From contig NIVC01001316.1 in NCBI GenBank assembly GCA_002269645.1, positions 34,338 to 98,337 of the forward strand: a DNA stretch of 64,000 nucleotides. Direction: 5' to 3'. Shown here one piece after another: positions 5,480-40,761 of the stretch. The position numbers and the translations under genes were made by a program. This stretch comes from Macrostomum lignano (lineage: Eukaryota). The notes under the pieces were generated by a model. It ran no database searches, was not told where the DNA came from, and saw only the letters and a list, made by a program, of their open reading frames with translations. Every line of letters starts with the position of its first letter. Position 1 is the stretch's first letter.

Positions 5480-6581
5480 TCTTTTTCTTCTAAATATACT
5501 AAATCTCTAAGGTTTGTATGCTTGTCCATAACGCTCTAGTCTTCTAAATATACTAAATCTCTAAGGTTTGTATGCTTGAATGAATGAATGTCCATAACGC
5601 TCTAGAGACTGCAATTCTTCACCGATTTTGATCGCGTTTTCGCCAAAAGATTCAAAATTGTCTGGAAAGAAGACGGTTAAAATTTCTTTAATCTGCTTCA
5701 ATGCTAAAGGGATTAAATATTCGAAAAACTGTTTTAAATGGCCTTTTTCAATGCAAATTTTATCAGCCAGAAACTTCACTGCCAATTTTAATTGATTGCG
5801 CCAGAGCCAACTGATAAGAAAACTCACTCCGCTCCACTTAAAGGGGGGCAATAAAAAATTATTCTGGCTGCTGGCAGCCAGCTCTAATTAGCTAGTCTAA
5901 ATATACTAAATCTCTAAGGTTTGTATGCTTGAATGTCCATAACGCTCTAGAGATTGCAATTCTTCACCGATTTCGATCGCGTTTTCGCCAAAAGATGCAA
6001 AATTGTCTGGAAAGAAGACAGTTAAAATTTCTTGTATCTGCTTCAATGCTAAAGGGATTAAATATTCGAAAAACTGTTTTAAATGGGCTTTTTCAATGCA
6101 AATTTTATCAGCCGGAAACTTCACAGTCAATTTTAATTGATTGCGCCAGAGCCAACTGATAAGAAAACTCACTCCGCTCCACTTAAAGGGGGGCAATAAA
6201 AAATTATTCTGGCTGCTGGCAGCCAGCTCTAATTAGCTAGTCTAAATATACTAAATCTCTAATATTTGTATGCTTGTCCATAACGCTCTAGAGATCGCAA
6301 TTCTTCACCGATTTTCATCGCGTTTTCGCCAAAAGATTTCTAATCAGCCTGGGATTGTATGGTTAAAATTTCTTGTATCTGCTTCAATGCTTAAGGGATT
6401 AAATATTCGAAAAACAGTTTTAAATGGGCGAATTCAATGCAAATTTTATCAGCGAGAAACTTCACAGTCAATCTTAATTGATTGCGCCAGAGCCAACTGA
6501 TAAGAAAACTCACTGGACCCCACTTAAAGGGGGGCAATAAAAAATTATTCTGGCTGCTGGCAGCCAGCTCTGATTAGCTAG
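5480..6581 (+). repeat. Tandem mini-Helitron units: a 60-bp stub plus three ~340-355-bp units
   Basis: Units 5540-5895, 5896-6240 and 6241-6581 each end in the CTGGCTGC-tg-GCAGCCAG hairpin followed by ...AGCTAG. Confidence 0.85.
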
Positions 6582-7456
6582 TCTAAATATACTAAATCTC
6601 TAATATTTGTATGCTTGCTTGTCCATAACGCTCTAGAGATTGCAATTCTTCACCGATTTTCATCGCGTTTTCGCCAAAAGATTTGTAATCAGCCTGGGAT
6701 TGTATGGTTAAAATTTCTTGTATCTGCTTCAATGCTAAAGGGATTAAATATTCGAAAAACTGTTTTAAATGGGCTTTTTCAATGCAAAATTTTATCAGCG
6801 AAAAACTTCACAGCCAAATTTAATGATTGCGCCAGAGCGAACTGATCAGAAAACTCACTGGGCCCCACTGCCCAGATAATTACTCTATTTAAATTGCGCA
6901 AGCATACCAGGGTCAAAAATAAAATTATTCTGGAGGCTAGCAGCGAGCTCTTTAAGCGTCAAAGATTTGTTTTTCGTAACGCTTTACAGACTGCAATTCT
7001 TGACCAATTTTGATCGCGTTTTCGCCAAAAGTTTTGTAATTATCTGGAAAGAGGACAGCTAAAATTTCTTTAATCTGCTTTAATGCTAAAGGTATTAAAT
7101 ATTCGAAAAACAAGTTTATCTAAATGCTTTTAATGGAAGGCCAAGCAGCGTTGAATTCTTGACTGGCTGAATTCCAATTCTAAATGATTGCGCCACAACT
7201 GCGTACTGCATATTCTCGCTATAAACTGACTCTGAGCTTTTCAGCAGGAGGCAGTGTGCCAAGCATTGCGCAGGCACTCTGGAGGAAGAGAGAAATCAGC
7301 CAGTGCATTTTAAAAGTATTGAAATTGAGAGATTTACTTAACTGTGCAATGGCTCTGCCAGTACCAAAACTGTGCACACTGAGCAGCCTATCACTGCTAT
7401 GTATTTGACTGCAGTGCCGAAGCATATATGTCTGATTTTTGCGCCCTCCCATCAGT

Positions 7457-7540
7457 AGGCGGAATACCCGCAGTGTAGGCAGTAGGACTAGGTTTAGGCT
7501 AGGCGCAAGGTCCAAGGTTCGAGTCCGCCTCGCCGGCCGA
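7457..7540 (+). other. Degenerate tRNA-derived (SINE-like Pol III) head inside a Helitron unit; copies at ~35605-35690 and ~36235-36315
   Basis: TAGCCGCACTGTAGGC D-arm-like segment (clearest in the 35.6 and 36.2 kb copies) and B-box GGTTCGAGTC; the cloverleaf is incomplete. Confidence 0.45.
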
Positions 7541-7901
7541 TAATTAAAATTAAATAAATTAGTTCATTTATACCTAGCGCCTCAACTAATTGAATCACTT
7601 TTGATTAATTAGTAAGCCACACTCCATGAATGATTTTTGCTATTCAGCACAATATTTTTGAGCACAAGTTGCTAAACAAATTTGAATTTGATTTGATTTC
7701 AGCCAGTGCATTTTAAAATTTGATTTGTAAAAGACTGCTTTGTGTATTACTGCTCCCGAATTGCAGACGATGCTGCTAAATAGCTAAACAGCTGAAGGTA
7801 CTGCTAAATGCTGAGCTGCGCAAAAGACTGCCGATATGTATCGAAAATTGATTAGTGAGTCCTACTAAATGCTGAGCAAATTATCAGATTACTGAAAGAA
7901 T

Positions 7902-8375
7902 AGTAGAAGGCATGAGGGGGCTTTTGGGACAAAATTTTTCACCTCCTCCATAATCCACCTAAATCCATCCATATTATCCCTGACAGAATCAGAAAAAAGG
8001 GGGGTCGCACTCGCTCCGAAAACGTCCTCCATAATCCACCTAAATCCATCCATATTATCCCCGACAGAATCAGAAAAAAGGGGGGTCGCACTCGCTCACA
8101 AAACATCCTCCATAATCCTATTAAATCCATCCATATTATCCCTGACAGAATCAGAGCATTATCCCTGACAGAATCAGAGCATAACAGTAGGACACCTGTT
8201 ATGCTCACTGACACTGACATAATCCACTGACATCCACCCATAGCATTTTCGAAACAATCAGAAAATAATCTGCATTCTTCTCCCCACATTCAATCCGCAA
8301 CGTGCTACCACATCCCTAAGACTTTAAATCATCAGCGCAGGGTCCTTACCCTTTGAAAAAATCTAAATTTTCTCT
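7902..8375 (+). repeat. Left terminal inverted repeat of Polinton B, with internal ~71-bp tandem repeats
   Basis: Reverse complement of 23535-24009 with roughly 8 mismatches and 1 indel counted by eye. Confidence 0.96.
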
Positions 8376-8397
8376 GAATCTTGATTGTCTTTTATAT

Positions 8398-9075
8398 GCT
8401 TACGAAGCTTCGTAAATTGAAATTTTCTGTCGCTAAAGATATTTACTCTGAACTACTACTTCTACTAGCAGTAAGTTAAAAACATATTTTAGTATTTTCT
8501 GCTTTTTCATTAAAGAGTTTACGAAGCTTCGTAAATTGAAATTTTCTGTCGCTAAAGATATTCACTCTAAACTACTACTTCTACTAGCAGTAGGTTAAAA
8601 ACATATTTTAGTATTTTCTGCTTTTTCATTAAAGAGTTTACGAAGCTTCGTAAATTGAATTTTTCTGTCGCTAAAGATATTTACTCTGAACTACTACTTC
8701 TACTAGCAGTAAGTTAAAAACATATTTTAGTATTTTCTGCTTTTTCATTAAAGAGTTTACAAAGCTTCGTAAATTGAAATTTTCTGTCGCTAAAGATATT
8801 TACTCTGAACTACTACTTCTACTAGCAGTAAGTTAAAAACATATTTTAGTATTTTCTGCTTTTTCATTAAAGAGTTTACGAAGCTTCGTAAATTGAAATT
8901 TTCTGTCGCTAAAGATATTCACTCTAAACTACTACTTCTACTAGCAGTAGGTTAAAAACATATTTTAGTATTTTCTGCTTTTTCATTAAAGAGTTTACGA
9001 AGCTTCGTAAATTGAAATTTTATGTCGCTAAAGATATTCACTCTGAACTATTACTTCTACTAGTAGTAGGTAAAA
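8398..9075. repeat. Array of six 119-bp repeats (last one partial), each with the palindrome TTTACGAAGCTTCGTAAA
   Basis: TACGAAGC registers at 8401, 8520, 8639, 8758 (variant), 8877 and 8996. Confidence 0.95.
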
Positions 9076-9236
9076 AAACGTGTCGAGTCAGATTCCAATT
9101 AACAAAAAAAACCGAATTATGTTGATTCAGTTATTATTTATTTTAATAATTATAAAGAGGCCTTTTTTTAACGACTATTCAATTTATATAAATCACCATT
9201 TCAAGCACAACAGACAGCCATGTAGTAGTCACTTCT

Positions 9237-10037
9237 TCACTCCATGACATCTACTCCGTCACCTGGGTCATCTACTTCGTCACCTGGGTCGTCTACTTCG
9301 TCACCTGGGTCGTCTCGAACGTCCACGGCCCAATTGGTCAGGGCAATCTCGGCTGTGACGCCTTCTTCGTTTACGTATTCGAACGTCTCATGCTCAACTT
9401 CCAAGGCCAGACGAAATTCTTCGTCGTCCTTGGTAAAATCGACGATTGCCTTCTTGTATTTCAAAATCGTTGTAAGGCAATATCCAGTAAATGGCAGAGC
9501 TATGTAACGCATCGCTAGCTCGTAGTACGCTACATACTCTTTCGCCTTTCGGACGGTCAATCCGAATTCCTCCGCAATCTTCTCGATAGGCCTAGTTTTC
9601 GTACTGAAGACGATTGCCCGAGCCTGCTCGAACATTCCTAGGCTTTTTAAGTTTTCTAGCGGCCGCAGACAGTCCGAAATAGTCACAAATATACTGCGGA
9701 CCTCTTCGCTAGATTTATTCCGTAGATCTTGTCCTAGGCTGGACAGCAGCGTCTTAAGCAGGCCACCGTCAATGCGAAGACCTTTTGCGGCCAGATAAGT
9801 GAGCCTCCGTTTGAGATTTCGTAGGAATGTCTCCTGCTCGTTGTCGGCATTGCGATTCATTGGTCTCCTTTTATGTTTTTTACTCTTGTTTTTTCCATCT
9901 TCTTCTAGCTTGTCAAGTTTCTCCTTAAACTTCTTCAGCTCCTCCGGCGACCAAGACGCTAACGCCTCCGCAAGCGAAATATCGCTTTTCGCATGCAGCT
10001 CCTTCAATTTCTCGATTGTTTTCTCAATGTTGCTCAA
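9237..10037 (-). CDS. Orphan Polinton ORF (up to 266 aa): basic NLS-like patch, HTH-like segment and acidic DDPGDEV x3 tail; putative DNA-binding regulator
   Basis: Long open frame. KNKSKKHKRRP; PIEKIAEEFGLTVRKAKEYV. The track start at 10037 is TTG and the first in-frame ATG is at 9860. TATA box upstream; AATAAA downstream on the minus strand. Confidence 0.7.
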   Translation of the reverse strand: MSNIEKTIEKLKELHAKSDISLAEALASWSPEELKKFKEKLDKLEEDGKNKSKKHKRRPMNRNADNEQETFLRNLKRRLTYLAAKGLRIDGGLLKTLLSSLGQDLRNKSSEEVRSIFVTISDCLRPLENLKSLGMFEQARAIVFSTKTRPIEKIAEEFGLTVRKAKEYVAYYELAMRYIALPFTGYCLTTILKYKKAIVDFTKDDEEFRLALEVEHETFEYVNEEGVTAEIALTNWAVDVRDDPGDEVDDPGDEVDDPGDGVDVME

Positions 10038-10117
10038 TGTGAAAATTGTGGCAATCGTTGTCGATAGACTTGATAGTGAATTTAGCGCATAACCCCCAGA
10101 CGAGGATTATGATTCGC

Positions 10118-10212
10118 TTTTATAGCTTTGGAAGGCGTGGGATTCTCTTTTTATTCTAGAATATTCTAGAAGCAGAATTCTAGAAGGAAAACACTTTTCG
10201 TTGCTATAAATA
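10118..10212. promoter_or_regulatory. Bidirectional promoter: TATAAAA (minus, 10118-10124), heat-shock element (10154-10185), TATAAATA (plus, 10205-10212)
   Basis: TTCtaGAAtaTTCtaGAA at 10154-10171 is four perfectly alternating nGAAn units; a further TTCtaGAA lies at 10178-10185. Confidence 0.7.
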
Positions 10213-10314
10213 CGCCGGAATTAGACCACCCTATCCCGTCTCTCCCACTCCCATATAATCCCCTTTACAAGCTTTCGCGCAAGGTTTTCTTTCCAACCAC
10301 TTGAGGCACTTGAA

Positions 10315-10815
10315 TCATTCTGCTCTCTCTACCCCCAGCTCTTTCAGCAGTCTTCCCAATTCATTGTTAGGAGCGCACAAAATAAACTCTGCTCCCGTGC
10401 GTTCGCCCTCTCTCCCCGTGCACTCGCCCTCTCTCCCCAAACACCCGCCCTCGGCGTACACCCCCAACCCCAGTTTTGTCTTACTAAAAATAACAGCTTT
10501 AACTAGCTTCCGAGCGATCGACTCACGAAATCCGCTTGAAATCCCCATATTGTCGAGTCTCCTGAGCATTTCTTTGTCCCAGCGATTCTTCTCCTCAGGA
10601 AAATCTCCATACTTAACGTCGTGCCACATGCAGACAGAGTCTAGCTCGTTCACAGGCTCATGCCCAGGATTTGGGTTGTTGTTTCCATCCAGCTGTATTT
10701 CAAGAGGATTCAAAGGCCCGCAATATTTATAGCCGGGAAGTGTCCAGCCTTTGTTTGGATGAGGAAGCTTTTCTATCAGTCCATGTGAATCTAACTTACC
10801 ACCAGAGCGTTGCAT
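10315..10815 (-). CDS. Parvovirus-VP1-type phospholipase A2 protein (PLA2X-like)
   Basis: LPGYKYCGPLN Ca-binding loop and catalytic D...HD.KY (ELDSVCMWHDVKYGD). Confidence 0.9.
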   Translation of the reverse strand: MQRSGGKLDSHGLIEKLPHPNKGWTLPGYKYCGPLNPLEIQLDGNNNPNPGHEPVNELDSVCMWHDVKYGDFPEEKNRWDKEMLRRLDNMGISSGFRESIARKLVKAVIFSKTKLGLGVYAEGGCLGREGECTGREGERTGAEFILCAPNNELGRLLKELGVERAE

Positions 10816-10844
10816 TATTTTATTTTATATTTTCTTTTTAAAAA

Positions 10845-11881
10845 ATGACAGATCAGAAACTTAAAAAACTCTACTACAGCGACAAAGGATTCTTTGTAGG
10901 AAAAAATGCAGTCACCAAACTCGCAGAACTAAGTAAGGAACCAAAAGCTAAAGTAGAAAAGTGGCTCTCTAAGCAAGCAGTCTACCAAGTCTATTTCCCA
11001 CCAGTAAAATTTGAAAGGCCCCATTTCAGTATTTATAAACCTAATGAGGCGCACCAAGCAGATCTTTTGTTTCTCCCCAACGACTCAGGCTACAAGTATG
11101 CTCTCACAATTATTGACATTGCTTCCAGATATAAGGAAGCTCGCCCACTCAAGACGAAGAAGTCAGAGGTTGTTGCCAGCGCACTGCAAGATATTTATAA
11201 AAACTCTCCGCTCACATACCCCCAAACCTTTATGACCGACCCGGGTAAGGAATTCATGGGTGCAGTGAAATCCCTTATGGAAAAGCACAATACAGAGATT
11301 CGCTACGGAAGAACAGACCTGCACAGGGATCAAGCGTACGTTGAGAGATTCAATCTAACTCTAGCCAAGAGACTATTCACTAAGCAGACAGCGCAAGAAC
11401 TCAAACTGAGTGCGGGGCAGTACTATACCAAGTGGACAGAAAGACTCCCCACTGTTATAGAGCAACTGAACAATGAAGTCACACGCATGACTGGATTGAA
11501 ACCATCCCATGCAATTAAACAAGACACTGTCGAACTTAAGGCATCTCATAGAACAGACAACAACACGACAACCCCACACAACACACACAACACAAAACAC
11601 ACCTCGAACTACCCTAAGCTTCCAGGAGTTGAATCACCATACATACTGACAAACTCTGAGTTTCTACGCTTTTTATATCACCTGGAGAGCTAGAGAAAGA
11701 CACCAAAAGAAGAGCTACAGATCCATACTTCAGCCTTGATGTGCATAAAATAGACAGACATTTTACCTCCGACTCCGGTGACTATTACTTTTTATCTCAA
11801 GCCTTTAACCCTAAATCCCCCACGCGGTCATTCACTAGAGCTGAACTCCTAGTGATACCAGCTGACACAGAAATTAATTAA
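10845..11881 (+). pseudogene. Retroviral-type (rve/DDE) integrase; two 1-nt frameshifts near the 3' end
   Basis: HQADLLF, IIDIASRY, TDPGKEF, ERFNLTL. The C-terminus continues in shifted frames as PGELEKDTKRRATDPYFS and PTRSFTRAELLVIPADTEIN* (stop 11879-11881). Confidence 0.92.
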
Positions 11882-11897
11882 AATATTAAAATAAAAA

Positions 11898-12343
11898 ATG
11901 ACAAAGATTGAAACCAGAACCATCAATAAACTCAATAAAATCATTGAATCAAAGAAACAGGTATTATATCAATTAAAGGTGCCAAAGTAAAAATCGATCC
12001 CACGCAGCAAATACTTCAGTGTAATGAGCAAAGACACAGCATCACAGATGAAAAGTCAGGAGGAATCCTACCATTAGCAGCTCTTATTCCGATCATTGCA
12101 GGCGCTGTAAGTGCCGCAGGTGGTGTAGCTGGAGGTGTAGCAACTGCTGTTAAAGCTGGGAATGATAGAGCCCACCAGCTGGAATTGCAAAAGATTGCAA
12201 GAGACAAAGGTATAACAATTAAGGCAGGAGAGGGCTGCCCCGATCGTGATGATTGTGAGAATGAAAATTCTATAAGCAAGTCTGACATTGTCAAAGCAAT
12301 CATGACACTGCACAATGCTGGGTTTACAATAATGCGCATGTGA
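11898..12343 (+). pseudogene. Small Gly/Ala-rich amphipathic virion protein (GGILPLAALIP motif; cupiennin-like/pVI-like type); one frameshift; not in the ORF track
   Basis: ATG at 11898 in AAAAAATG context. Adding 1 nt near 11963 gives a 148-aa ORF containing KSGGILPLAALIPIIAGAVSAAGGVAGGVATAV. Confidence 0.7.
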
Positions 12344-12483
12344 ATGTGAATGTGAAAGTGATGAGGTTTAAAACCCCACTTTATCCAGCTTCATAAACCT
12401 AACGCTACTGATAGGATGTAGAAACAGTTCAACTTTTCTATCAGGGTAGTAACCCTTAAATTTTTTTTATTTTAGAGAAAAAA

Positions 12484-15400: not shown

Positions 15401-16325
15401 TCACCAAAGTTCACAGGGCTCTTACATTTACAGAGGAAGCGTGGATGAAACCCTACATTGATAAGAACACCCAGTTTAGGACCAAAGCAACCAACGACTT
15501 TGACAAGAACCTCTTTAAGTTGGCCAACAACTCTGTCTATGGCAAGACTCTTGAAATGAGCGGAAAAGAACAAACCTGAAACTTGTTACCTCATCAGAGC
15601 CTGATGTTATTCAGGCAAATATGTCAAAGCCAACATTCAAAGAACTCCATATCTTTAATAGCTACTTAGGTGTGATCATATTTTACAAAACCAAGGTGAC
15701 GCTGCGCAAGCCGATCTATACAGGTGTCACTGTTCTCGACGAATCAAAACGTCTGATGTACCAATTCTTCTATGGCATGAAGCAGCAGTACAAGGATAAA
15801 ATGAAACTCTTGTACACCGACACAGACAGTTTTATTATGGACATTCAAACAGAAGACATTTATCAGGACATGCTGCAGCAAAAAGATTTGTTTGACTTGT
15901 CTGAGTATGATGAATCTTGCAGGACACAGAATGGTGATCAAGTGTTTGACGCTACTAACAAGAAAGTGATTGGGAAAATGAAGGACGAGATTGCTGGTGA
16001 CATAATCACTGAATTCATTGGGTTGAGAGCAAAGTCCTATTTTATAAAATGTGAGTCGTCAGACCCAATCAAAAAATCAAAGGGAATTCCGAAACGTGTA
16101 GTTAGGAAGGAAATTAATGAAGCTGAATACAGAGACGCCTTGAATTGCAACAAAAAGACATCACATGAGTTCTCAAAGCTACAATCTAAAAACCATATTA
16201 TTCACACAATTCAGCAAAAGAAGATTGGACTGTCAGGTGCAGATAACAAAAGATTCATTTTTGATGACAATATTAACAGTCTACCGTTCGGGCACTGGAG
16301 ATTAGGTTTAGGAGGTGGAGGTTAG
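12484..16325 (+). pseudogene. pPolB of Polinton B, broken by ~5 frameshifts and one in-frame TAG (13245-13247)
   Basis: Fragments join in order: GSGW...KYDPLKASSYIELP, KKACINVKN, CHIC...VRDHCHYTGKFRGAAHNTCN zinc finger, exonuclease YADFE, RKKGFYPYE, then polymerase motifs ~99% identical to 3-1646. Confidence 0.95.
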
Positions 16326-16825: not shown

Positions 16826-16829
16826 GGGT

Positions 16830-30095: not shown

Positions 30096-30914
30096 AAGGT
30101 TGACAGATTTTTTAAGATTGCAAGGCTTATGGGGCATTGCTAAGATGTCAAGGGGGTTGATATGCTAAGGCTTGTGGGGAGATTTTCTGACATGTCAAGG
30201 CTTACAAGGTATAATGCAAAGAGACGCTTACATGTAGTTTATTAAAAAAAACTTGTACCGCATTTTTTTGGCTCCCCAACGGGGGGCGCTGATTGCTAGT
30301 CCAATATACTAAAAATGAGTTGTCTGTATGTATGTATGTATGTGGGTAGGTATGCGATAGATTTCAGAAAAATTGGCTCAACTGATTATCTTCAAACTTG
30401 CACCATTCGATCAGAAATTTTCCTGGGACGGTACATGCATCTTGGCTAAGAAATTGCTCAATGTTAAAGGGATTAAATATTCGAAAAACATGCTTTTTTG
30501 CAAAGGTCAAGCAGCTCTTTCGACCTGAAATGCATTGTAAGAATGCTAGAGAAAAAACTAACTGACTGAATTCCGATTGTGATAAAGATTGCATCACAAC
30601 AAGTTGAAAACAGTGCCGAAGAAAATGCACACACGACATGATTTAAATTGCGTAACCAATATTGCTAACTTGAAGTGAGACTGATACTGGCTGACTGAGA
30701 AATTGATTATGTCATCACTTTTTACTCCAATTGACTTGCTGTAAGAATTGAATTATAAGGGCCACAATTCATGTTCCCCAATTGAAAAGAGATAGCCAAG
30801 ATGCGAACAGACTGGAATGCTAATGTAGCGACCTGGGTTCGAATCTTAGAAGCGCAAAATAATTTTTTTATTAAAACACCTTAAAAACAAAAAAACTGCT
30901 AAACATAAAAAAAG

Positions 30915-33900
30915 CGCAATAGAAGAGCCACCATGTCAAACCTAAAGGAGCCACCATGTCGAACATAAAAGAGCCACCATATCGAACATAAAAGAGTTAC
31001 CATGTTAAAAATTAAAGAGCCACCATGTCGAACATTAAAGAGCCACCTTGTCAAACATAAAACAACCACCATTTCGAAAATTAAAGAGCCACCATGTCAA
31101 ACTTTAAAGAGCCACCATGTCGAACATAGAAGAGCCACCATGTCAAACATAAAACCGACACCATTAAGAACATTAAAGAGCCACCATTTCAAACCTAAAG
31201 GAGCCACCATGTCGAACATTAAAGAGCCACAATGTCAAACATTAAAGAGTTACCATTTCAAACCTAAAGGAGCCACCATGTCGAACATTAAAGAGCCACC
31301 ATGTCGAACATAAAAGAGCCACCATATCAAACATTAAAGAGCCACCATGTCGAACATTAAAGAGCCACCATGTCGAACATAAAAGAGCCACCATATCAAA
31401 CATTAAAGAGTTACCATGTCAAACATTAAAGAGCCACCATGTCGAACATTAAAGAGCCACCATTTCAAACCTAAAAGAGCCACCATGTCAAACATTAAAG
31501 AGCCACCATTTCAAACCTTAAAGAGCCACCTTGTCAAATATTAAAAAGCCACCATGTCGAACATAAAAGAGCCACCATGTCGAACATTAAAGAGACACCA
31601 TTTCAAACCTAAAAGAGTTACCATGTCAAACATTAAAGAGCCGCCATGTCAAACATAAAACAGACACCATTAAGAACATTAAAGAGCCACCATGTCGAAC
31701 ATTAAATAGCCACCATGTCAGAAATAAAACAGCCACCATTTCGAAAATTAAAGAGCCACCATTTTAAACATTAAAGAGCCACCTTGTCAAATATTAAAGA
31801 GCCACAATGTCAAACATTAAAGAGCCACCTTATCAAACATTAAAGAGCCACCATGTCGAACATAAAAGAGCCACCATGTAGAACATAAAAGAGTCACCAT
31901 GTCAAGCATTAAAGAGCCACCATGTCAAACATTAAAGAGCCACCAGGTCAAACATGAAAGTGCCACCATATAAAACATTAAAGAGCCACCATGTCAAACA
32001 TTAAAGAGCCACCAGGTCAAACATATACATGACTCCATGTCAAACATTAAAGAGCCACCATGTCGAACATAAAAGGGCCACCATGTCAAATATTAAAGAG
32101 CCACCATGTTAAACATTAAAGAGCCACCAGGTCAAACATGAAAGTGCCACCATGTAAAACATTAAAGAGCCACCATATCGAACATTTAAGAACCACCATG
32201 TCAAACATAAAATAGCCACCATGTGAAACATATAGGTGACTCCATGTAAAACATTAAAGAGCTACCATATCAGACATATACATGACTCCATGTCAAACAT
32301 ATACGTGACTCCATGTTAGACATTAAAGAGCCACCATGTCGAACATTAAAGAGCCAACGTGTTAAAAATACAAGAGCCACCATGTCAAACATATACATGA
32401 CTCCATGTCAAACATTGAAGAGACACCATGTCGAACATAAAAGAGCCACCATGCAAAACATAAAAGAGCCACCATGTCTAACATTAAAGAGCCACCATGG
32501 CAAACATATACATGACTCTATGTCGAACAATCAAGAGCCACCATGTCAAACATATACATGACTCCATGTCTAACGTTAAAGAGACACCATGTCAAACATA
32601 AAAGAGCCACCATGTCAAACATTTAGGAGCCACCAGGTCAAACATGAAAGTGCCACCATGTAAAACATTAAAGAGCCACCATGTCAAACATATACGTAAC
32701 TCCATGTCAAACATTGAAGAGACCCCATGTCAAACATTAAAGAGCCACCACGTCGAACATAAAAGAGCCACCATGTAAAACATATACGTAACTCCATGTC
32801 AAACATTGAAGCGACACCATGTCGAACATAAAAGAGCCACCATGTCGAACATTAAAGAACCACCATGTCAAACATAGAAGAGCCATCATGTCAAACATAT
32901 AAGTGACTTTATGTCGAACATTAAAGAGCCACCATGTCTAACATTAAAGAGCCACCATGTCCAACATTAAAGAGCCACCATGTCAAAAATTAAAGAGCCA
33001 CCATGTCAAACATTAAAGAGCTACTTTGTCTAACATTAAAGAGCCACCATGTCAAACATTAAAGAGCCACCATGTCAAACATTAAAGAGCCACCATGTCA
33101 AACATAAAAGAGCCACCTTTTTGAACATTAAAGAGCCACCATTTCGAACATTAAAGAGCCACCATGTCAAACATAATAGAGCCACCATGTCAAACATTAA
33201 AAAGCCACTTTGTCAAACATAGAAGAGCCCCCATGTCAAACATAGAAGAGCCCCCATGTCAAACATTGAAGAGACCCCATGTCAAACATTAAAGAGCCAC
33301 CACGTCGAACATAAAAGAGCCACCATGTAAAACATATACGTAACTCCATGTCAAACATTGAAGCGACACCATGTCGAACATAAAAGAGCCACCATGTCGA
33401 ACATTAAAGAACCACCATGTCGAACATAGAAGAGCCATCATGTCAAACATATATGTGACTTTATGTCGAACATTAAAGAGCCACCATGTCTAACATTAAA
33501 GAGCCACCATGTCCAACATTAAAGAGCCACCATGTCAAAAATTAAAGAGCCACCATGTCAAACATTAAAGAGCTACTTTGTCTAACATTAAAGAGCCACC
33601 ATGTCAAACATTAAAGAGCCACCATTTCGAACATTAAAGAGCCACCATGTCAAACATAAAAGAGCCACCTTTTTGAACATTAAAGAGCCACCATTTCGAA
33701 CATTAAAGAGCCACCATGTCAAACATAATAGAGCCACCATGTCAAACATTAAAAAGCCACTTTGTCAAACATAGAAGAGCCCCCATGTCAAACATAGAAG
33801 AGCCCCCATGTCAAACATAGAAGAGCCCCCATGTCAAACATAGAAGAGCCCCCATGTCAAACATAGAAGAGCCACTATGTCAGACATTGAAAAGCCACCG

Positions 33901-33960
33901 TATCAAACATTAACTCCATGTACGAGCGTAGAACATAAAAGAGCCAGCCTGTTAAACATA
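30915..33960 (+). repeat. Satellite 2, 23-bp monomer GAGCCACCATGTCAAACATTAAA; short version at ~40070-40450
   Basis: About 130 copies within Helitron unit 30300-34677; includes a 552-bp higher-order duplication. Confidence 0.95.
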
Positions 33961-34049
33961 AAAGATACACAATTTCAAACGTAAAAGTAAGCGAATTTTA
34001 AAGGAGCCGCTATAATGCTAAGGAAATTGTCGCACTAGCTACTTATTGT

Positions 34050-34535
34050 CTGGTGGATGCTTGCTATTTGGGGATGCTATCTATCTTGGGGATGCTTGCT
34101 ATCTGGGGGATGCTTGCTATCTGGGGGATGCTTGCTATCTGGGTGATGCTTGCTATCTGGGGGATGCTTGCTATCTGGGGGATGCTTGCAATCTGGGGGA
34201 TGCTTGCTATCTTGGGGATGCTTGCTTTCTGGGGGATGCTTGCTATCTTGGGGATGCTTGCTATCTGCGGGATGCTTGCTATCTGGGGGATGCTTGCTAT
34301 CTGGGGGATGCTTGCTATCTGGGGGATGCTTGCTATCTGGGGGATGCTTGCTATCTGGGGGATGCTTGCTATCTGGGGGATGCTTGCTATCTGGGGGATG
34401 CTTGCTATCTGGGGATGCTTGCTATCTGGGGGATGCTTGCTATCTGGGGGATGCTTGCTATCTGGGGGATGCTTGCTATCTGGGGGATGCTTGCTATCTG
34501 GGGGATGCTTGCTATCTGGGGGATGCTTGCAGTCT
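34050..34535 (+). repeat. 18-bp minisatellite GGGGGATGCTTGCTATCT (~27 copies)
   Basis: Homogeneous tandem array; only ~3-4 copies in the sister unit at ~40555-40615. Confidence 0.95.
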
Positions 34536-37500
34536 TGGGATGATTTCTTTTTGCAATGCACTTCATTTGAGCAGTTTGTCTGTTGTCTTTTTGAAGGATT
34601 TTTGGCTGTCTTTTTGTTACTTGTAGAAAACAGAGATTATATCCAGATGTCCCCCATCGGGGGGCGAAGATTGCTAGTCTATCTTTCTTAAATATACTAA
34701 ATCTCTAAGGTTTGTATGCTTGAATGAATGTCCATAACGCTCTAGAGATCGCAATTCTTCACCGATTTTCATCGCGTTTTCGCCAAAAGATTTCTAATCA
34801 GCCTGGGATTGTATGGTTAAAATTTCTTGTATCTGCTTCAATGCTAAAGGGATTAAATATTCGAAAAACATGCTTTTTTTCAAAGGTCAAGCAGCTCTTT
34901 CGACTTGAAATGCATTGTAAGAATGCTAGATAAAAAACTGACTGGCTGAATTCTGATTCTGATAAAGATTGCATCACAACAAGTTTAAAACACTGTGCCA
35001 AGTTGAAAGACAGAAATTGCGTAACCATATTGCTAACTTTAATTGAGACTGATGCTGACTGCCTGAGTATTTGATTATGTCATAGCTGCTTCGTGTGACT
35101 TTCATTCGATAAGAATTTGTGTTAGTACGAGCGTATTCGTGTAACTCTTTAGAGATCGAACCGATTGACCAATTTTAATCGCGTTTTCGCCAAAAGATTT
35201 GTAATTATCTGGAAAGAAGACAGTTAAAATTTCTTTAATTGGCTTTAATACTAACGGTATTAAATATTCGAAAAACGAGTTTTCCCAATGTTTTCCCAAT
35301 GCAAGGTTGAATTCTTGACTGGCCGAATTCCAATTCCAATTATGATTGCGCCATAACTTTTCTCTCTCCACTGTGTAAGCTTCAATACTGGTTGCAGTGT
35401 GCAAGGAGAAAAAATGCTCAGTGGCTGCGTGTGCCCTGGCTCTGACTGGCGGACTCCATAGAAAATTGCTATTTATAGATTTCACTCAGTCAACTGTGCA
35501 TTGGCTCCGCCTGCACGCCTACACACTGAGCAGCCTATCACTGCTATGTATTTAACTGCAGTTCTGAAGCATATATGGCTGATTTTGTTGTCCTCCCATC
35601 AATAGGCGGAGTAGCCGCACTGTAGGCACTAGGACTAGGTTTAGGCTAGGCGTAAGGTCCAAGGTTCGAGTCTGCCTCCCCGGCGGATAATTAAAATTAA
35701 AACAATTTAATAATTTATAGCTTGTGCCTCGACTAATTGGAACATTTTTTGATTAATTTCAATTGAAACATTTTTCATTAATTCGCAATTCATTTTGCTA
35801 CGAGCTACTCGGCACAAGCCAGTAATCAAATCTGATTTGTTAAAACTGCTTCGAGTATAACTGATCCCATCAATGGGTATTGTCTAGCTCCATAGAAGTA
35901 CGAAATTACTAAACTGCAGACAATGCTGCTAAATTGCTTAAAGGTATTGCTAAATGCAGAGCTTTCCGAGACTGCCGATATGTATCGAAAATTGATTAGT
36001 GAGCCGTACAATTCTGAGCAAATTGCAGTTTTCTGAGGGGACTGAGATGCCGGCCAGAGAAGAACTGCAGACTGTGAATTAGTTCCTCCAGACTTAAATC
36101 TAATTTATAGATTTCACTTAACTGCGCATTGACGCTGCCTGCATGCAACCCGTGCACTGAGCAGCCTATCACTGCCGTGTATTTGACTAAAGTGCCAAAG
36201 CATATATGGCTGATTTTGTCGCCCTCCGATCAATAGTCGGAGTAGCCGCACTGTAGGCATTAGGACCAGGTTTAGAATAGGCGTAAGGTCCCAGGTTCGA
36301 GTCTACCTAGCAGCGGACAATAAAAATTGAACTAATTATTTCATTTAAGCTTGTGCTTTGACTAATTGGAACTATTATGCTTAATTAACAGGACACACTT
36401 GATGAACTATTTTTGCTATATGGCACAAGTCGCTAAGCAAATTTGATTTGTAAAAACTGCTTCGAGTACATGTATTACGAGCGTTAGCGAGTATTGCTAA
36501 ATGCTGAGTTTTGCAAGACTGCCGATATGTATCGAAAATTTATTAGTGAGCCGTAAAATTCTGAGCAAATTGCAGTTTGCAGAGGAAACTGAGGAGCCGG
36601 CCGAGAGGAGAACTGCAGGCTGCTGAGAGGATGAATGAAAATTGTTAATGGAACAGTTGAAGACTGCAAATGGAATGACTGCAGACTGCTGAGGGGAACT
36701 GCAGATTGTCGAAGGGATCATTGCGGATTGCAAAGGGGAAACAACTGCAAACTGTTGATGTTGTTCCTCAAGACTTATGAGCGTATAGCTGCAGACTGCT
36801 GAGAGGGAAAACTGCCCACTAATTGGAGGATAATGGCAGACTTCTGAGGATAACAAAAAACCATTGAGTTTTGAGTGAATATTAACTGTGGAAGATTAAG
36901 TACAAGTTGTTGAAGGGATTACTGTGGGCTGCTAAGTGAAATATTTTTTGCTAAGGGGACAATTCTATGCCACTGAGGGTATACATGCTTAATTTTAATA
37001 AAAGTTGTAGAATTCAAAGAGGATGATAAATGCCGGCTGGTAAGAAATGACTGCAGTCTTTTTTGCGGGATTAGATGAAGGGATAATTTCAAGTTTTGTG
37101 GGGATAAATGCCGATTTATGGGGGTTAGGTTCAAATATGGAGATAAGTGGCCATCTGCTCGCAGATTTTGCGGAAAGTGCTGGTGAATTATTGCTAAACT
37201 GCTGGTGAACCATTGCTAAAGTGATGGTGAAACACTGTAATTTTTTTAAAAAATTCTACTTTGAACAGAAGAACTCAAGGCAAGAAAAAGCGAAAAAAGA
37301 ATCACCATGTCAACCATAAAAGAAGCGGTCTGTCGAGCATAAAAGACTCAATGGGAATTGCTAAGATGTCAGGGCTGGTATGGGAAATTGATTTGATGTC
37401 AGGACTCATGGGAGAATTTCTATGATCCAAGGCTTAGGAGGCAATTGCTATAATGATGTAATTCTGGGGAGAATTGCTTTGATTTCAAGTTTCATTTGTG

Positions 37501-40500
37501 AAATTGCTGATTTATATTGGCTCATTGGAAAATTGCCTTGCTGTCAAAGCTCATGGGGATAATTACTGGAATGCTTTGGCTGTTGGGGAATGGTCGAGAT
37601 TGTTAGGGTAAGGTAAGGGTTAAACCATAAATGAAATTGGCCTGTCAAACATTAAAGACTTCATTGGGGAATGCCAAAGTTCATGGGGGGATATCTGGAT
37701 TATACTGTGGCTCAAGGCTAGGGAAAAATTGCTGTGATTGCAAGACTTGGGGATATTGCCTAAATTTTGTGGCTCAATTAAGAGTTTCTCAGATATTTCT
37801 GAGATATCAAGTCTCATTATGGAATCACTGAAATGTCAACGCTCATGGGGGATCCCTGTAATGCTGTAGACTGTGGCTCTTTGGGTATTGCTGAGATACT
37901 AAGGTTCAGATGAGACTGGCCGAGATGTCAAAGGCTCATAAGGGAATAGCTGAAATTCAATAATTGTCAAGGGTAATTGTTGAAATACTATGGTTTATGG
38001 TGGGACTTGCTGAAATGCTATGACTTGGCAGGGTTAGGGTTAGTTTTCAACCATGACTCATGTGGAATTGCTGAATTTCTTAAGCTGAGAGGGAGTGGCT
38101 GAAATGCTGTGACTCGACTGCAAGTTAGGGTTATGGTTTGGGTTTGGGTTCAATTATAGAACAATCGTCTTGTCAGACATAAATGATTCCTGGTGGAATT
38201 GCTAAGATTAAAGGCTCTTGGGGCGAATTACTTAAATGCTTTAGCTCTTCGGGGAATTGCTGACAGGTTAAAGCTTTCGGCGAAATATAGATTTCAAGGC
38301 TTATGAGGCTTATGATGAGATGTCAAGGCATACTGGGGGAATTGCTGAAACGCCAAGGCTTACTGGAGAAATCGCTGAGATGTTAAGGTTTACTGAGGAA
38401 ATTTCTGAGAAGCTGCCAAGGCTTACTGGGGAATCACTGAGATGTCAAGGCATACTGAGAAAATTTCTGAGATGTCAAGGCTTACTGGGGGAATTGCTGA
38501 GATGTTGAGCCTTACTGAGGAAATTTCTGAGATGACAAGGCTTACTGGGGGAATTGCTGAGATTTTGAGGCTTATTGAGGAAATCTTAAGATGCAAAGGC
38601 TTACTGGGCTTGCTGTCGACGCTTACTGACAAGGGAATTTCTGAGACGTTGCTTACTGGGGGAATGGCTGAGATGCCAAGGCTTACTGGTGGAATCGTTG
38701 AGATGTCAAGGCTTTCTGAGCTGGAAGAATTGCGCGGCTGTCAAGGCTCGAGTTTAATTGCTGCGATTTGGATGCTTACTGAGGGAATTTCTGAGATGTC
38801 AAGGCCTTCTATGGGAATTGTTGAGATATCAAGGCTCATGAGGGGGGGGGGTGGCGGAATTTTTGGGCGGAGGGGAGTTGGGTTGTTGGGATGTCAAGGC
38901 TTACTGGGCTGGGAGAATCGCGAAGATGTCAAGGCTGAAGTATAATTGCTGCAATTTCGAGGCTTATTGAGGAAATTGCTGAGAGTTCAAGGTTTCCTGA
39001 GGGAATTGCTGAGATATCAAAGCTCATGGAGGATGGCTGAATTGTTAAGGGGAGGGAGTTAGATTGTTGAGAGATTATCAGATCGTCAAGTAGTACGGCT
39101 CAGGTAGCTCATTTAATTTAGATATTGAAATAGTACGCACAAGTGATGCTGATTTCTGCTAATAGAAATACCAGTGTATTTAATAAAGGTTTGGTTCTTT
39201 GAGTTAGGCTAATAAAGAGGGGTCTAAGGCCGTAAGGGATTGGCATATTGAGCTCCTGCTGCGGACCAGAATATGCTCCGGCCAGTGACAATATGCACTA
39301 AGAGTTTGTGCTTAAAAGGATAAGCACTATTTGCTGATTGAGATAGGGTTTTGGGCTGATGAAAGTTTTGATTCATGGCAATTTGGTTTCATTTTTAAGG
39401 CCCCCCAGCGGGGGGCTAAATGGCTAGTCCAATATACTAAAAATCAAAACTATGTACCTATCTATATCCACCATATACTAAAAATGGTCTGTCAGTATGT
39501 GTGTGTGTGTGATCGATTTTAGCAAAAACGGCTCAACCGATTTTCTTCGAACTTGCACCATTCGATCAGAAATTTTTCCGTGACGAACATGCATCGTGGC
39601 TAAGAAATTGCTCGATGCTAAAGGGATTAAATATTCGAAAAACATGCTTTTTTGCAAAGGTCAAGAAGCTCTTTCGACTTGAAATGCATTGTAAGAATGC
39701 TAGAGAAAAAACTGACTCGTTAAATTCTGATTCTGAATTAGATTGCATCACAACAAGTTGAAAACAGTGTCGAAGAAATGCACACACGACTTGATTTAAA
39801 TTGCGTAACCAATATTGCTAACTTGAACTGAGACTGATACTGGCTGACTGAGAAATTGATTATGTCATAACTTTTTACTCTAATTGACTTGCTATAAGAA
39901 TTAAATTATAAGGGCAACAGTTCATGTTCTCCAATTGAAAAGAGATAGCCTAGATGCGAACAGACTGGACTGCTAATGTAGCGACCTAGGTTCGAATCTT
40001 AGTAGTGCAAAATAATTTTTTTATCAAAACACCCTAAAACACAAAAAGCTAAACATAAAGGAAGCGCAATGTCAAACATTAAAGAGCCAACCATCTAAAA
40101 CATTAAAGAGCCACCATGTCAAACATATGCATGACTCAATGTCAAACATATGCGTGACTCCATGTCAGACTTTAAAGAGCCACCATGTCGAACATTAAAG
40201 AGCCACCATTCGAACATAAAAGAGCCACCATGTAAAACATATACGTGACTCCATGTCAAACATATACGTGACTCCATGTCAAGCATAAAAGAGCCACCAT
40301 GTCGAACATAAAAGAACCACCATGTCAAACATAAAAGAGCCACTATGTCAAACAATAAACAGACACCATGTCAGACAATAAAAAAACCCCGAATCAAACA
40401 TAAAAGAGCCACCATGTAGAACATTAAAGAGCCACCATGTCAAACATAAAATTTACACAATTTCAAACGTAAAAGTAAGCGTCATGCCAATTTTAAAGGA

Positions 40501-40761
40501 GCCACTATAGAGCTAAGGAAATTGTAGCACTAGCTACTTATTGTATGGTGGATGCTTACTATTTGGGGATGCTTGCTATCTGGGGGATGCTTGCTATCTG
40601 GGGGATGCTTGCTGTCTTGGGATGATTTCTTTTTGCATTACACTTTATTCGAGCAGTTTGTCTGTCGTCTTTGTGAAGGCTTTATTTGGCTGTCTTTTTG
40701 TTACTTGCAGAGAACAGAGATTCTATCCAGATGTCCCCCAACGGGGGGCGAAGATTGCTAG

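What the first reader, a model, noticed from the sequence alone, without database searches (positions are those of the whole stretch)
5480..40761. Russian-doll locus: one Polinton split to the nucleotide by a 35.3-kb Helitron concatemer that itself contains a second whole Polinton
Seen: AAAGTATT (ends 5479) plus TGTATTTTC (starts 40762) restores the reading frame RFRKYKYFKQW exactly as in the uninterrupted copy (20383-20399). The insert begins TC, ends hairpin-CTAG, has no TSD, and the target is T|T rather than the usual A|T. Inference: either successive Helitrons stacked at one site and Polinton B then integrated, or the concatemer moved as a block carrying a 16-kb virus as cargo. The inner virus shows more lesions than the outer one, which fits the cargo scenario but could reflect assembly error.
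Basis: partly seen in the sequence, partly recalled or inferred. Interest (0 to 1): 0.8.

Follow-up and report, generated by a model that had tools for sequence, protein, structure and literature searches.

The report
Polinton pierced by Helitron arrays
A virus-like Polinton element, probably in a Macrostomum flatworm genome, is cut exactly in two by a 35-kb head-to-tail chain of rolling-circle transposons (Helitrons) that itself holds a second Polinton; this is a real and tidy case of ordinary transposon nesting, and nothing shows that the chain carried the virus.

Summary
Polinton A stops at 5479 and resumes at 40762, and the uninterrupted sequence exists in Polinton B (20383-20399). The 35,282-bp insert is a non-coding array of nine Helitron units. 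All lie on the + strand, and each unit ending in hairpin-CTAG is joined directly to the TC start of the next. Unit U4 holds Polinton B (7902-24009), which has 477-bp inverted ends, AG...CT tips, a 6-bp AAGAAT duplication and the full Polinton gene set.

New points:
- A second Helitron array enters Polinton A's capsid gene at 42320|42321 (A|T) and runs to the window end.
- This second array includes an autonomous, possibly intact, intron-bearing RepHel gene.
- All units of both arrays share one 5' core.
- The host is probably Macrostomum lignano.
- A and B are mosaics: polymerase 99.3% identical, ATPase and capsid about 80% identical with dN/dS about 0.07.
- A is very young, yet the array units are only 68-92% alike. 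The arrays were therefore heterogeneous before they arrived, either as blocks or by rapid stacking at the Helitron 5' edge.

Head-to-tail Helitrons, T|T targets and read-through are all published. Transport of B as Helitron cargo is neither required nor excluded. Moderate interest.

The parts
1..5479 (+). Polinton A, left in-window part. It continues beyond the window start. It holds the pPolB C-terminal 548 codons (3-1646, +, open), protease (~1734-2090, +), g2 (2140-2805, -), g3 (2913-3587, -), A32-type ATPase (3603-4403, -), g5 (4511-5002, -) and the C-terminal part of g6 (4914-5479, -).
   Evidence: Collinear with B 14676-20390. Pfam and tblastn. The pPolB frame is open from base 3.
5480..40761 (+). 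Helitron array 1: 35,282 bp, or 19,168 bp without Polinton B and one duplication copy. It is non-autonomous and sits at T|T inside gene g6 of Polinton A.
   Evidence: No RepHel remnants.
5480..5539 (+). U0: a 60-bp fragment holding only a 5' end. It stops at the CTAG that is part of the conserved 5' region and is followed directly by a new TC start.
5540..6581 (+). U1-U3: three mini-units of 341-356 bp (5540-5895, 5896-6240, 6241-6581). Each ends with hairpin GCTGGC-A-GCCAGC, 9 nt and CTAG.
6582..26450 (+). U4: a Helitron unit of 3,755 bp of its own sequence, interrupted by Polinton B. Its 3' end is CCCC-AGC-GGGG ... CTAG.
   Evidence: U7 is collinear on both sides of B's insertion point and has no Polinton.
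7896..7901 (.). Left copy of the 6-bp target duplication AAGAAT of Polinton B.
7902..24009 (+). Polinton B, 16,108 bp, with termini AG...CT.
7902..8378 (+). Left terminal inverted repeat of B. It contains 81-bp tandem repeats.
10315..10815 (-). PLA2-like (PLA2X-type) gene of B.
   Evidence: Pfam PF08398, E 6.5e-13.
10845..11860 (+). rve integrase of B, broken by one frameshift.
   Evidence: Pfam PF00665. The homologue matches in two frames.
13586..16325 (+). Protein-primed DNA polymerase B with an N-terminal endonuclease VII domain, in B. Broken by two frameshifts.
   Evidence: Pfam. Full-length homologues of 930-956 aa match in three frames.
16382..16825 (+). Adenain-type cysteine protease of B, open.
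   Evidence: Pfam PF00770, 21.4 bits against a cut-off of 21.3. Homologue match.
16830..17480 (-). g2 of B, function unknown. Broken by one frameshift, in a homopolymer run.
   Evidence: The A copy is open (221 aa).
17596..18405 (-). g3 of B, function unknown, open. It carries an in-frame 84-bp tandem repeat that A lacks.
18421..19221 (-). A32/FtsK-type packaging ATPase of B, open.
   Evidence: Pfam PF04665.
19414..19898 (-). g5 of B, a homologue of a 130-aa protein of relatives. Split into two reading frames (at least one frameshift).
   Evidence: The A copy is open (163 aa).
19861..21024 (-). g6 of B, 387 aa, glutamine-rich, function unknown, open. This is the uninterrupted version of the gene that array 1 cuts in A.
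21055..22350 (+). Double jelly-roll major capsid protein of B, open.
   Evidence: Pfam PF21738, E 5e-9. Homologues up to 76% identity.
22347..23229 (+). Gene after the capsid gene in B, the candidate penton (minor capsid) protein. Broken by one frameshift.
   Evidence: Homologues of 261-273 aa match in two frames.
23532..24009 (-). Right terminal inverted repeat of B.
24010..24015 (.). Right copy of the target duplication AAGAAT.
26451..30299 (+). U5, a composite unit. An x-type 5' part, 89.5% identical to the start of U7, runs to ~27349. A second (y-type) 5' core then starts at 27350. It also holds a 23-bp satellite (27961-29164) and ends in hairpin-CTAG.
30300..34677 (+). U6, a y-type unit with a 23-bp satellite of 130 copies (30923-33913) and an 18-bp repeat (34049-34530). 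Its 3' end differs from that of U8 at 1 of 32 bases.
34678..39427 (+). U7, an x-type unit and paralogue of U4 (68-79% identity), without a Polinton.
39428..40761 (+). U8, a y-type unit and paralogue of U6 (about 82-84% identity). It has a doubled 5' core (39428 and ~39470). Its 3' end abuts Polinton A.
40762..42320 (+). Polinton A, middle part. It holds the N-terminal part of g6 (40762-41395, -) and the first two thirds of the capsid gene (41426-42320, +). The capsid gene has one in-frame stop and is cut off by array 2.
42321..64000 (+). Helitron array 2, at least 21.7 kb, running off the window. It sits at A|T in Polinton A's capsid gene. Unit ends, each a hairpin CTCCTCC-N3-GGAGGAG plus 5 nt plus CTCG, lie at 51596, 54059, 55825, 57050, 58274, 61078 and 63405. 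Extra 5' cores lie at 42332, 42505 and 42552.
42546..51596 (+). Autonomous Helitron unit of array 2, about 9 kb.
43760..49390 (+). RepHel gene: GC-rich exons (55-58% GC) and about nine short AT-rich introns. It carries Rep motifs (EYQKRG-LPHVH across a GC-AG intron, and YVVKYITKG) and a PIF1-type helicase.
   Evidence: 96% identical to a Macrostomum lignano protein.

Best explanation
This is a stack of ordinary transposition events in a transposon-rich region, most likely of Macrostomum lignano.

Step 1. A Polinton (A), an adintovirus-like element encoding polymerase, integrase, protease, ATPase and capsid, integrated recently.

Step 2. A non-autonomous Helitron array was placed between two T's inside its gene g6 by a RepHel rolling-circle transposase. 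A second array, which contains an autonomous RepHel gene, was placed at an A|T in the capsid gene 1.56 kb away. The target is nearly free of mutations, yet the units of each array are only 68-92% alike. The arrays were therefore not made on the spot by copying one unit. They arrived already heterogeneous. The more likely route is as multi-unit blocks, with the transposase starting at one 5' end and reading through internal terminators to a downstream 3' end. The alternative is a quick series of insertions, each into the (A/T)|T dinucleotide that the host base forms with the leading T of the resident Helitron.

Step 3. Polinton B, a recombinant relative of A, was inserted into unit U4 by a retroviral-type integrase, which made the 6-bp duplication.

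The structure, the junctions and the insertion chemistry implied by the end signatures are shown. The route of array arrival, and whether B entered U4 before or after the array reached A, are inferred. I consider integration of B on the spot more likely than transport as cargo.
For: - Exact junctions and the uninterrupted paralogue.
- Eight internal CTAG|TC junctions, seven preceded by a hairpin, all on one strand.
- Three different stem sequences at the same distance from the unit end.
- One shared 5' core in all units of both arrays, including the autonomous unit.
- A RepHel gene next door with a Helitron-type Rep motif and at least one splice pattern that keeps it open.
- Polinton B hallmarks.
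- U7 is collinear across B's insertion point without a Polinton.
- A is young: one small lesion in 7.0 kb, polymerase 0.67% different from B with 7 synonymous and 4 non-synonymous changes, and no difference in 690 bp around the junction.
- The units are old relative to each other.
- A 3-kb block spanning two unit junctions is 96% identical between the window (51510-54474) and M. lignano contig NIVC01004741.1. Neighbouring units within one array are only 80-93% alike. Multi-unit blocks are therefore copied between loci.
- Literature: unlike Helitrons joined CTAG|TC and the host-base-plus-T target model (PMC2267711); TT as the commonest non-AT target, circles with CTAG-TC junctions and terminator read-through (PMC4778049); use of a downstream Helitron's terminator and Helitrons up to 39 kb (PMC6431247); Helitron arrays in plants and cnidarians (PMC11934779).
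Against: - No second copy of array 1 or of Polinton B with its flanks could be examined, because the host genome is not searchable with these tools.
- Reading through eight terminators in one event has no direct precedent that I found.
- B's two inverted repeats differ by 2%, more than A and B differ in the polymerase gene. Either the repeats were not identical at integration, or A and B have exchanged sequence by gene conversion. The second case would weaken the 'A is young' argument drawn from A-B identity, though not the argument drawn from A's open reading frames.
- Only one host junction pair is available for array 1, and only a 5' junction for array 2.
- The 96% block shared with the M. 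lignano contig could reflect segmental or whole-genome duplication rather than transposition.
Confidence: 0.6

Rival explanations
1. Cargo scenario. Polinton B integrated into U4 while the array sat at another locus. RepHel then moved the whole 35.3-kb array, Polinton included, into Polinton A in one rolling-circle event.
For: - The array looks pre-formed.
- Helitrons up to 39 kb and read-through to a downstream Helitron terminator are documented (PMC6431247, PMC4778049).
- In the shared 7 kb, B carries more small lesions than A: 4 or more frame breaks against one stop.
- A possibly intact RepHel gene lies 3 kb away.
Against: - Nothing in the sequence requires it. The duplication only records integrase action.
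- The lesion difference is a handful of events. Over whole lengths the rates are similar (about 6 breaks in 16 kb against 1 in 7 kb).
- A and B are near-identical over the polymerase gene and g6. That fits B arising close to A, whereas under the cargo scenario it would be coincidence.
- It needs a 35-kb transfer past eight terminators rather than 19 kb.
- No second copy was found, though none could be searched for.
Confidence: 0.2
2. Stepwise stacking. The array was built in place by about nine separate insertions of different family members. Each went into the T|T (array 1) or A|T (array 2) formed by the host base and the first T of the resident Helitron. The 3'-most unit would then be the oldest.
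For: - Each insertion regenerates the target, and the outcome is exactly CTAG|TC with no host base in between.
- This model was proposed for two unlike, adjacent maize Helitrons (PMC2267711).
- The units are unlike each other.
Against: - It needs nine or more hits on one dinucleotide, twice within one young Polinton, in the time in which 690 bp of flank gained no substitution.
- The x-a / y-b pair order recurs inside the array (U4...U6 and U7-U8).
- A two-junction block is shared at 96% with another locus.
- Both of the last two points suggest multi-unit copying.
Confidence: 0.25
3. Assembly artefact. Near-identical Polinton segments and tandem Helitron units led the assembler to join pieces that are not contiguous in the genome.
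For: A and B share stretches of 99-100% identity. The region is full of tandem and dispersed repeats.
Against: - The two ends of the insert are reciprocal. A Helitron 5' TC abuts one Polinton base and the 3' CTAG abuts the very next base. A false join would not produce that.
- Polinton B has matching duplications on both sides.
- Only one of the three frame-breaking indels in the polymerase gene and g2 lies in a homopolymer run.
- Unit number and satellite lengths could still be wrong.
Confidence: 0.05

Closest known systems
Head-to-tail Helitron pairs and arrays (maize r1 region, Myotis, Arabidopsis centromeres, cnidarian subtelomeres)
   Same: Precise CTAG|TC junctions with no host base, uniform orientation, and units that can be unlike each other (PMC2267711). 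Arrays are attributed to rolling-circle replication or local amplification (PMC11934779). The joined ends match the circle junction seen with Helraiser (PMC4778049).
   Different: Here nine or more unlike units sit at a single dinucleotide inside a nearly unmutated target, and this happens twice within 1.6 kb. There are also short stutters that hold only a 5' end (60, 41, 128 and 47 bp). The family-2 units end in CTCG rather than CTRR.
Polinton/Maverick elements of animals (adintovirus-like)
   Same: Inverted ends with AG...CT tips, a 6-bp duplication, pPolB with an endonuclease VII domain, rve integrase, adenain-type protease, A32-type ATPase, double jelly-roll capsid protein and a PLA2-like gene. 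Polymerase and virion modules are exchanged between lineages (PMC8502044).
   Different: The polymerase is at most 47% identical, and the capsid protein at most 76% identical, to anything in the protein collection. Two mosaic relatives lie 15 kb apart.
Helitron gene capture by terminator read-through (3' transduction)
   Same: It would explain block movement of several units, and of whatever lies between the first 5' end and the last 3' end (PMC4778049, PMC6431247).
   Different: Known captures are host gene fragments. I found no documented capture of a complete 16-kb virus-like element, and none is shown here.
Non-autonomous Helentrons (HINEs / DINE-1) that carry satellite-like repeats
   Same: A T|T target, T-rich variable 5' boundaries, and internal tandem repeats that fill much of the element (PMC4067079, PMC7492417).
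   Different: The ends are TC...hairpin...CTAG, not subterminal inverted repeats. The neighbouring RepHel has the Helitron-type residue in Rep motif 2 and no endonuclease domain.

Membership tests
Polinton/Maverick (Polinton B) | Long terminal inverted repeats with 5'-AG...CT-3' tips | tested here: met
   Arms of 477 bp, 98% complementary. The tips are AGTAG...CTACT.
Polinton/Maverick (Polinton B) | 6-bp target site duplication | tested here: met
   AAGAAT at 7896-7901 and 24010-24015.
Polinton/Maverick (Polinton B) | [quoted passage not shown] | tested here: met
   The Pfam PF03175 hit is below its cut-off on one piece. However, 6,061 homologues were found, and full-length homologues of 930-956 aa align end to end. 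The gene has two frameshifts.
Polinton/Maverick (Polinton B) | Retroviral-type (rve) integrase | tested here: met
   PF00665 at 38 bits against a cut-off of 32.6. One frameshift.
Polinton/Maverick (Polinton B) | Adenain-type cysteine protease | tested here: met
   PF00770 at 21.4 bits against a cut-off of 21.3, which is marginal. A conserved 130-aa homologue exists in relatives.
Polinton/Maverick (Polinton B) | A32/FtsK-type packaging ATPase | tested here: met
   PF04665 at 29.3 bits against a cut-off of 22.8.
Polinton/Maverick (Polinton B) | Double jelly-roll major capsid protein and a penton protein | tested here: inconclusive
   The major capsid protein is met: PF21738 at 36 bits against a cut-off of 27. 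The penton protein is inferred only from its position after the capsid gene and from conservation in relatives. No fold test was done.
Canonical Helitron (array 1 units) | 5'-TC and 3'-CTRR termini | tested here: met
   TC and CTAG at the host junctions and at eight internal junctions.
Canonical Helitron (array 1 units) | Short hairpin about 10-12 nt before the 3' end | tested here: met
   Stems of 5-8 bp, 8-9 nt before the terminal CTAG (12-13 nt before the unit end), with three different stem sequences at the same place. Single-sequence fold z-scores are weak, -0.6 to -2.6.
Canonical Helitron (array 1 units) | No target site duplication | tested here: met
   The flanks rejoin without extra or missing bases when compared with Polinton B.
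Canonical Helitron (array 1 units) | Insertion between A and T | tested here: not met
   The target is T|T. TT is the commonest non-AT target of Helraiser (PMC4778049). Array 2 does have A|TC at its 5' junction.
Canonical Helitron (autonomous unit, array 2) | RepHel protein: HUH Rep with two tyrosines, plus a PIF1-type helicase | tested here: met
   PF14214 at E 1.8e-52, and PF05970 and PF21530. Motifs LPHVH and YVVKYITKG are present. Intactness is not proven; open splice patterns exist.
Canonical Helitron (array 2 units) | 3'-CTRR terminus | tested here: not met
   The units end in CTCG after the hairpin. No host 3' junction is available in the window to fix the exact end.
Helentron / Helitron2 | Subterminal or asymmetric inverted repeats, an endonuclease domain (Helentron), and 'S' between G and P in Rep motif 2 | tested here: not met
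   The motif reads RG-L-PH (criterion from PMC4067079). No endonuclease domain appears in Pfam. By eye, the 5' ends have no inverted match to the 3' regions. The T|T target and internal satellites are the only shared traits.

The most novel reading that the evidence does not exclude
A Helitron array moved as one 35-kb block and carried a complete 16-kb Polinton with it. A rolling-circle transposon would then have acted as a vehicle for a virus-like element.
Probability: 0.2. Interest if true: 0.7.

Novelty: new member of a known kind. Interest (0 to 1): 0.4.

Why it matters
The locus offers an unusually clean natural record of how Helitron arrays form. Two heterogeneous, precisely joined arrays sit at single dinucleotides in a target young enough to serve as a clock. 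An autonomous partner that may still be coding lies in the same array. If other copies of the same unit order exist in the genome, the locus would show that whole arrays move as blocks. That is relevant to how Helitron arrays build subtelomeres and centromeres. It would also settle whether such blocks can carry a virus-like element. Separately, the two Polintons show capsid and ATPase module exchange under purifying selection in a flatworm. This points to a recently active, recombining population of adintovirus-like elements in a laboratory model animal.

Tried and rejected
- Exact-protein look-ups of three window genes found nothing. Scans of IMG/VR for the Polinton tip and of JGI metagenomes for the Helitron 3' end also found nothing. 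No second copy of array 1 or of Polinton B could therefore be examined.
- Rfam gave no match in the window.
- The Helentron/Helitron2 classification was considered because of the T|T target and the internal satellites. It was rejected on the Rep motif, the lack of an endonuclease domain and the end structure.
- I first read the RepHel gene as degenerate, with seven or more ORF pieces. I withdrew this after finding short AT-rich introns with GT/GC-AG borders. One of them restores Rep motif 2. A strict splice-site search found no fully open model. A relaxed search found two. No spliced sequence was written out.
- Divergence between B's inverted repeats (2%) was rejected as a clock, because it exceeds the A-B divergence in the polymerase gene.
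- Lesion counts were rejected as a way to order events, because there are too few of them.
- Gene conversion between A and B was considered as the cause of the mosaic identity. It cannot be excluded. It does not explain why the insert survived in a tract that is identical on both sides, and A's open reading frames show independently that A is young.
- For the A-B alignment the two flanks of A were placed side by side in a temporary file. The file was deleted. No joined, repaired or consensus sequence was kept or printed.

Full report
**1. The observation**

The window reads ...ttgtttaaagtatt|TCtttttcttctaaatatac... at 5479|5480. At 40761|40762 it reads ...gatgtcccccaacggggggcgaagattgCTAG|tgtattttctaaacc.... 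The second Polinton carries the undisturbed sequence ...ttgtttaaagtatttgtattttctaaacc... at 20383-20399, and its minus strand translates to RFRKYKYFKQW.

A self-comparison shows that 1-5488 is collinear with 14676-20400 and that 40762-42321 is collinear with 20391-21950. The insert is 35,282 bp. No base is lost or duplicated. The GTATT present on both flanks is also present twice in the uninterrupted copy, so it is not a target duplication. The target is T|T, with the usual one-base ambiguity.

**2. What the insert is**

The 32-nt 3' end occurs twice, at 34646-34677 and 40730-40761. The 5' motif occurs at 5486, 5540, 5893 and 34684. Chance expectation for both is 0. A scan for the 5' core ATACTAAA and for hairpin-CTAG signals resolves the insert into nine units joined head to tail on the + strand:

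| Unit | Coordinates | Notes |
|---|---|---|
| U0 | 5480-5539 | 60-bp fragment holding only a 5' end |
| U1 | 5540-5895 | mini-unit |
| U2 | 5896-6240 | mini-unit |
| U3 | 6241-6581 | mini-unit |
| U4 | 6582-26450 | holds Polinton B |
| U5 | 26451-30299 | composite, second 5' core at 27350 |
| U6 | 30300-34677 | satellite-rich |
| U7 | 34678-39427 | paralogue of U4 |
| U8 | 39428-40761 | paralogue of U6, doubled 5' core |

- Every internal junction is CTAG|TC with no base in between.
- Except at the end of U0, a 5-8 bp hairpin lies 8-9 nt before the CTAG (12-13 nt before the unit end).
- Three different stem sequences occupy that position: CCCCC/GGGGG, GCTGGC/GCCAGC, and CTCCTCC/GGAGGAG in the neighbouring array. 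This argues for the structure better than the weak single-sequence fold scores do.
- U0 stops at a CTAG that belongs to the conserved 5' region. It is followed at once by a new 5' end.
- Similar stutters holding only a 5' end occur at 27350, ~39470, 42505 and 42552.
- No part of the insert encodes RepHel, and large parts are 18-30 bp satellites.
- The units are unlike each other. U1-U3 are 88-92% identical, the start of U5 is 89.5% identical to the start of U7, U6 and U8 are about 82-84% identical, and U4 and U7 are 68-79% identical.
- The pair order 'x-type unit with a-type end, then y-type unit with b-type end' occurs twice (U4...U6 and U7-U8).

**3. The inner Polinton**

Polinton B spans 7902-24009 (16,108 bp). 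It has 477-bp inverted ends that are 98% complementary, AGTAG...CTACT tips, and AAGAAT on both sides.

Its genes are:
- a PLA2-like gene;
- rve integrase;
- protein-primed polymerase B with an endonuclease VII domain;
- adenain-type protease;
- two genes of unknown function (g2, g3);
- A32-type ATPase;
- g5;
- the 387-aa g6;
- the double jelly-roll capsid protein;
- a candidate penton gene.

Broken genes in B: polymerase (two frameshifts), integrase (one), g2 (one, in a homopolymer run), g5 (at least one) and the penton candidate (one). The other genes are open. U7 aligns collinearly with U4 on both sides of B's insertion point and has no Polinton there. B therefore entered Helitron sequence by integrase action.

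**4. The outer Polinton and its second wound**

In the window, Polinton A consists of 1-5479 and 40762-42320. Its polymerase frame is open from the first base. The protease, g2, g3, ATPase and g5 genes are open. Gene g6 is split by array 1. The capsid gene has one in-frame stop.

The capsid gene is cut off at 42320|42321, where a new Helitron 5' end begins (TCTCTCTCTTAATACTAAAACTG...). B continues there with its own sequence, so the target was A|T. The remaining ~2 kb of A is not in the window.

**5. The second array and the autonomous partner**

From 42321 to the window end there is a second head-to-tail array. Its units end with CTCCTCC-N3-GGAGGAG, 5 nt and CTCG.

The unit 42546-51596 carries a RepHel gene at 43760-49390, with Helitron_like_N at E 1.8e-52 and PIF1 domains. 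The gene has 55-58% GC in a 40% GC neighbourhood. About nine short AT-rich stretches with GT/GC-AG borders interrupt it. One of these restores Rep motif 2 as EYQKRG-LPHVH. By the criterion of PMC4067079, the L in that motif marks a Helitron rather than a Helentron. Homologues align exon by exon, and splice patterns exist that leave a single open frame. The gene may therefore be intact.

All unit 5' ends of both arrays, including that of the autonomous unit, share the core (T/C)n-ATACTAAA-...-TTGTnTG followed by a (TGNN)n run. All such cores lie on the + strand, apart from one lone, unrelated hit and the hits in a repeat inside Polinton B. It is an inference that the same or a related RepHel serves both arrays.

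**6. The host**

A RepHel piece is 96% identical to a Macrostomum lignano protein. Contig NIVC01004741.1 of assembly GCA_002269645.1 carries the same family-2 array and a truncated copy of the RepHel gene. A fragment of a different Polinton polymerase lies next to it.

Window 51510-54474 matches that contig at 96% across two unit junctions. Neighbouring units within one array are only 80-93% alike. Multi-unit blocks are therefore shared between loci.

**7. Ages**

A and B are mosaics.

| Region | Substitutions between A and B |
|---|---|
| Polymerase | 0.67% |
| 690 bp around the array 1 junction | 0 |
| g2 | 4.8% |
| g3 | 9.5% |
| ATPase | 20.5% |
| Capsid gene | 20.3% |

- The ATPase and capsid differences are mainly synonymous. 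In the ATPase, synonymous sites are saturated and dN is 0.068. In the capsid gene, dN/dS is 0.065.
- The two elements therefore carry old, functional alleles of the virion module on a nearly identical replication module. This matches the module exchange described for adintoviruses (PMC8502044).
- In the polymerase gene the few differences are 7 synonymous to 4 non-synonymous. Little of this divergence is decay after integration.
- A has a single small lesion in 7.0 kb.
- A is therefore very young, whereas the array units differ by 8-32%.
- The heterogeneity of the arrays must predate their arrival in A.

**8. Mechanism**

The end signatures indicate RepHel-mediated rolling-circle insertion. 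Two published routes can give unlike units joined CTAG|TC.

- Route 1 is read-through of internal terminators to the terminator of a downstream Helitron (PMC4778049, PMC6431247). This moves a pre-existing array as a block.
- Route 2 is repeated insertion at the (A/T)|T formed by the host base and the first T of the resident Helitron (PMC2267711).

I favour block arrival for three reasons: the target is young, the unit-pair order recurs, and a two-junction block is shared with another locus. This preference is an inference.

T|T is the commonest non-AT target of an experimentally studied canonical Helitron (PMC4778049), so it is not exceptional.

**9. Cargo or later arrival of B?**

The duplication shows integrase action but not its date. 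B has more small lesions than A in the shared 7 kb (4 or more against 1). Over whole lengths the rates are similar and the numbers are small.

B's inverted ends differ by 2%. This conflicts with the near-identity of A and B elsewhere, so it is not usable as a clock. The close relationship of A and B fits local origin better than coincidence.

I put cargo at about 0.2. Only a survey of the whole genome can decide.

**10. Verdict**

This is a real, well-resolved nest of known element types. It is a good natural specimen for studying how Helitron arrays form and how Polinton modules exchange. On present evidence it is not a new kind of system.

Noticed in passing
window 42546-51596 (RepHel gene 43760-49390): An autonomous Helitron whose RepHel gene has 55-58% GC exons in a 40% GC region and about nine short AT-rich introns. 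It may be intact. It is 96% identical to a Macrostomum lignano protein.
   Followed up: partly
window 3603-4403 against 18421-19221, and 41426-42320 against 21055-21949: The two Polintons share a 99.3% identical polymerase gene. Their ATPase and capsid alleles are about 80% identical, with saturated synonymous sites and dN/dS about 0.07. This indicates virion-module exchange between lineages, or partial gene conversion on the spot.
   Followed up: partly
window 42320|42321: Polinton A is cut a second time, at A|T in its capsid gene, by another Helitron array that runs to the window end. The last ~2 kb of A is not in the window.
   Followed up: yes
window 5480-5539, 27350, ~39470, 42321-42552: Short fragments holding only a Helitron 5' end (60, 41, 128 and 47 bp) recur, each followed by a fresh 5' end. 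U0 ends at a CTAG inside the conserved 5' region without a hairpin. They may mark premature termination and re-initiation by RepHel.
   Followed up: no
window 27961-29164, 30923-33913, 40051-40451, 34049-34530, 25626-25911, 38316-38836: Satellite-like arrays (23-bp units of up to 130 copies, plus 18-bp and 30-bp units) fill much of the non-autonomous Helitron units. Two different 23-bp satellites are present.
   Followed up: no
window 8400-9077: A 119-bp tandem repeat of 5.7 copies (96% matches) lies just inside Polinton B's left inverted repeat. The inverted repeats themselves contain 81-82 bp tandem repeats.
   Followed up: no
window 10315-10815: A PLA2-like gene next to the integrase in Polinton B. 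This accessory gene is typical of one class of adintovirus virion modules (PMC8502044).
   Followed up: partly
window 17812-18039: An in-frame 84-bp tandem repeat (2.7 copies) lengthens gene g3 of Polinton B relative to A.
   Followed up: no
L008 11412-13853 (M. lignano contig NIVC01004741.1): At another locus, a truncated copy of the same RepHel gene abuts a fragment of a different Polinton polymerase (31% identical) on the opposite strand. Helitron-Polinton adjacency therefore recurs in this genome.
   Followed up: partly
window 5480-64000: All Helitron units of both arrays (about 20 5' cores) and both Polintons have the same orientation. This resembles a one-strand transposon cluster, but no small-RNA data are available.
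   Followed up: no
window 7902-8378 against 23532-24009: Polinton B's two inverted repeats differ at about 2% of positions. That is more than A and B differ in the polymerase gene (0.67%) or around the junction (0). This is unexplained.
   Followed up: partly
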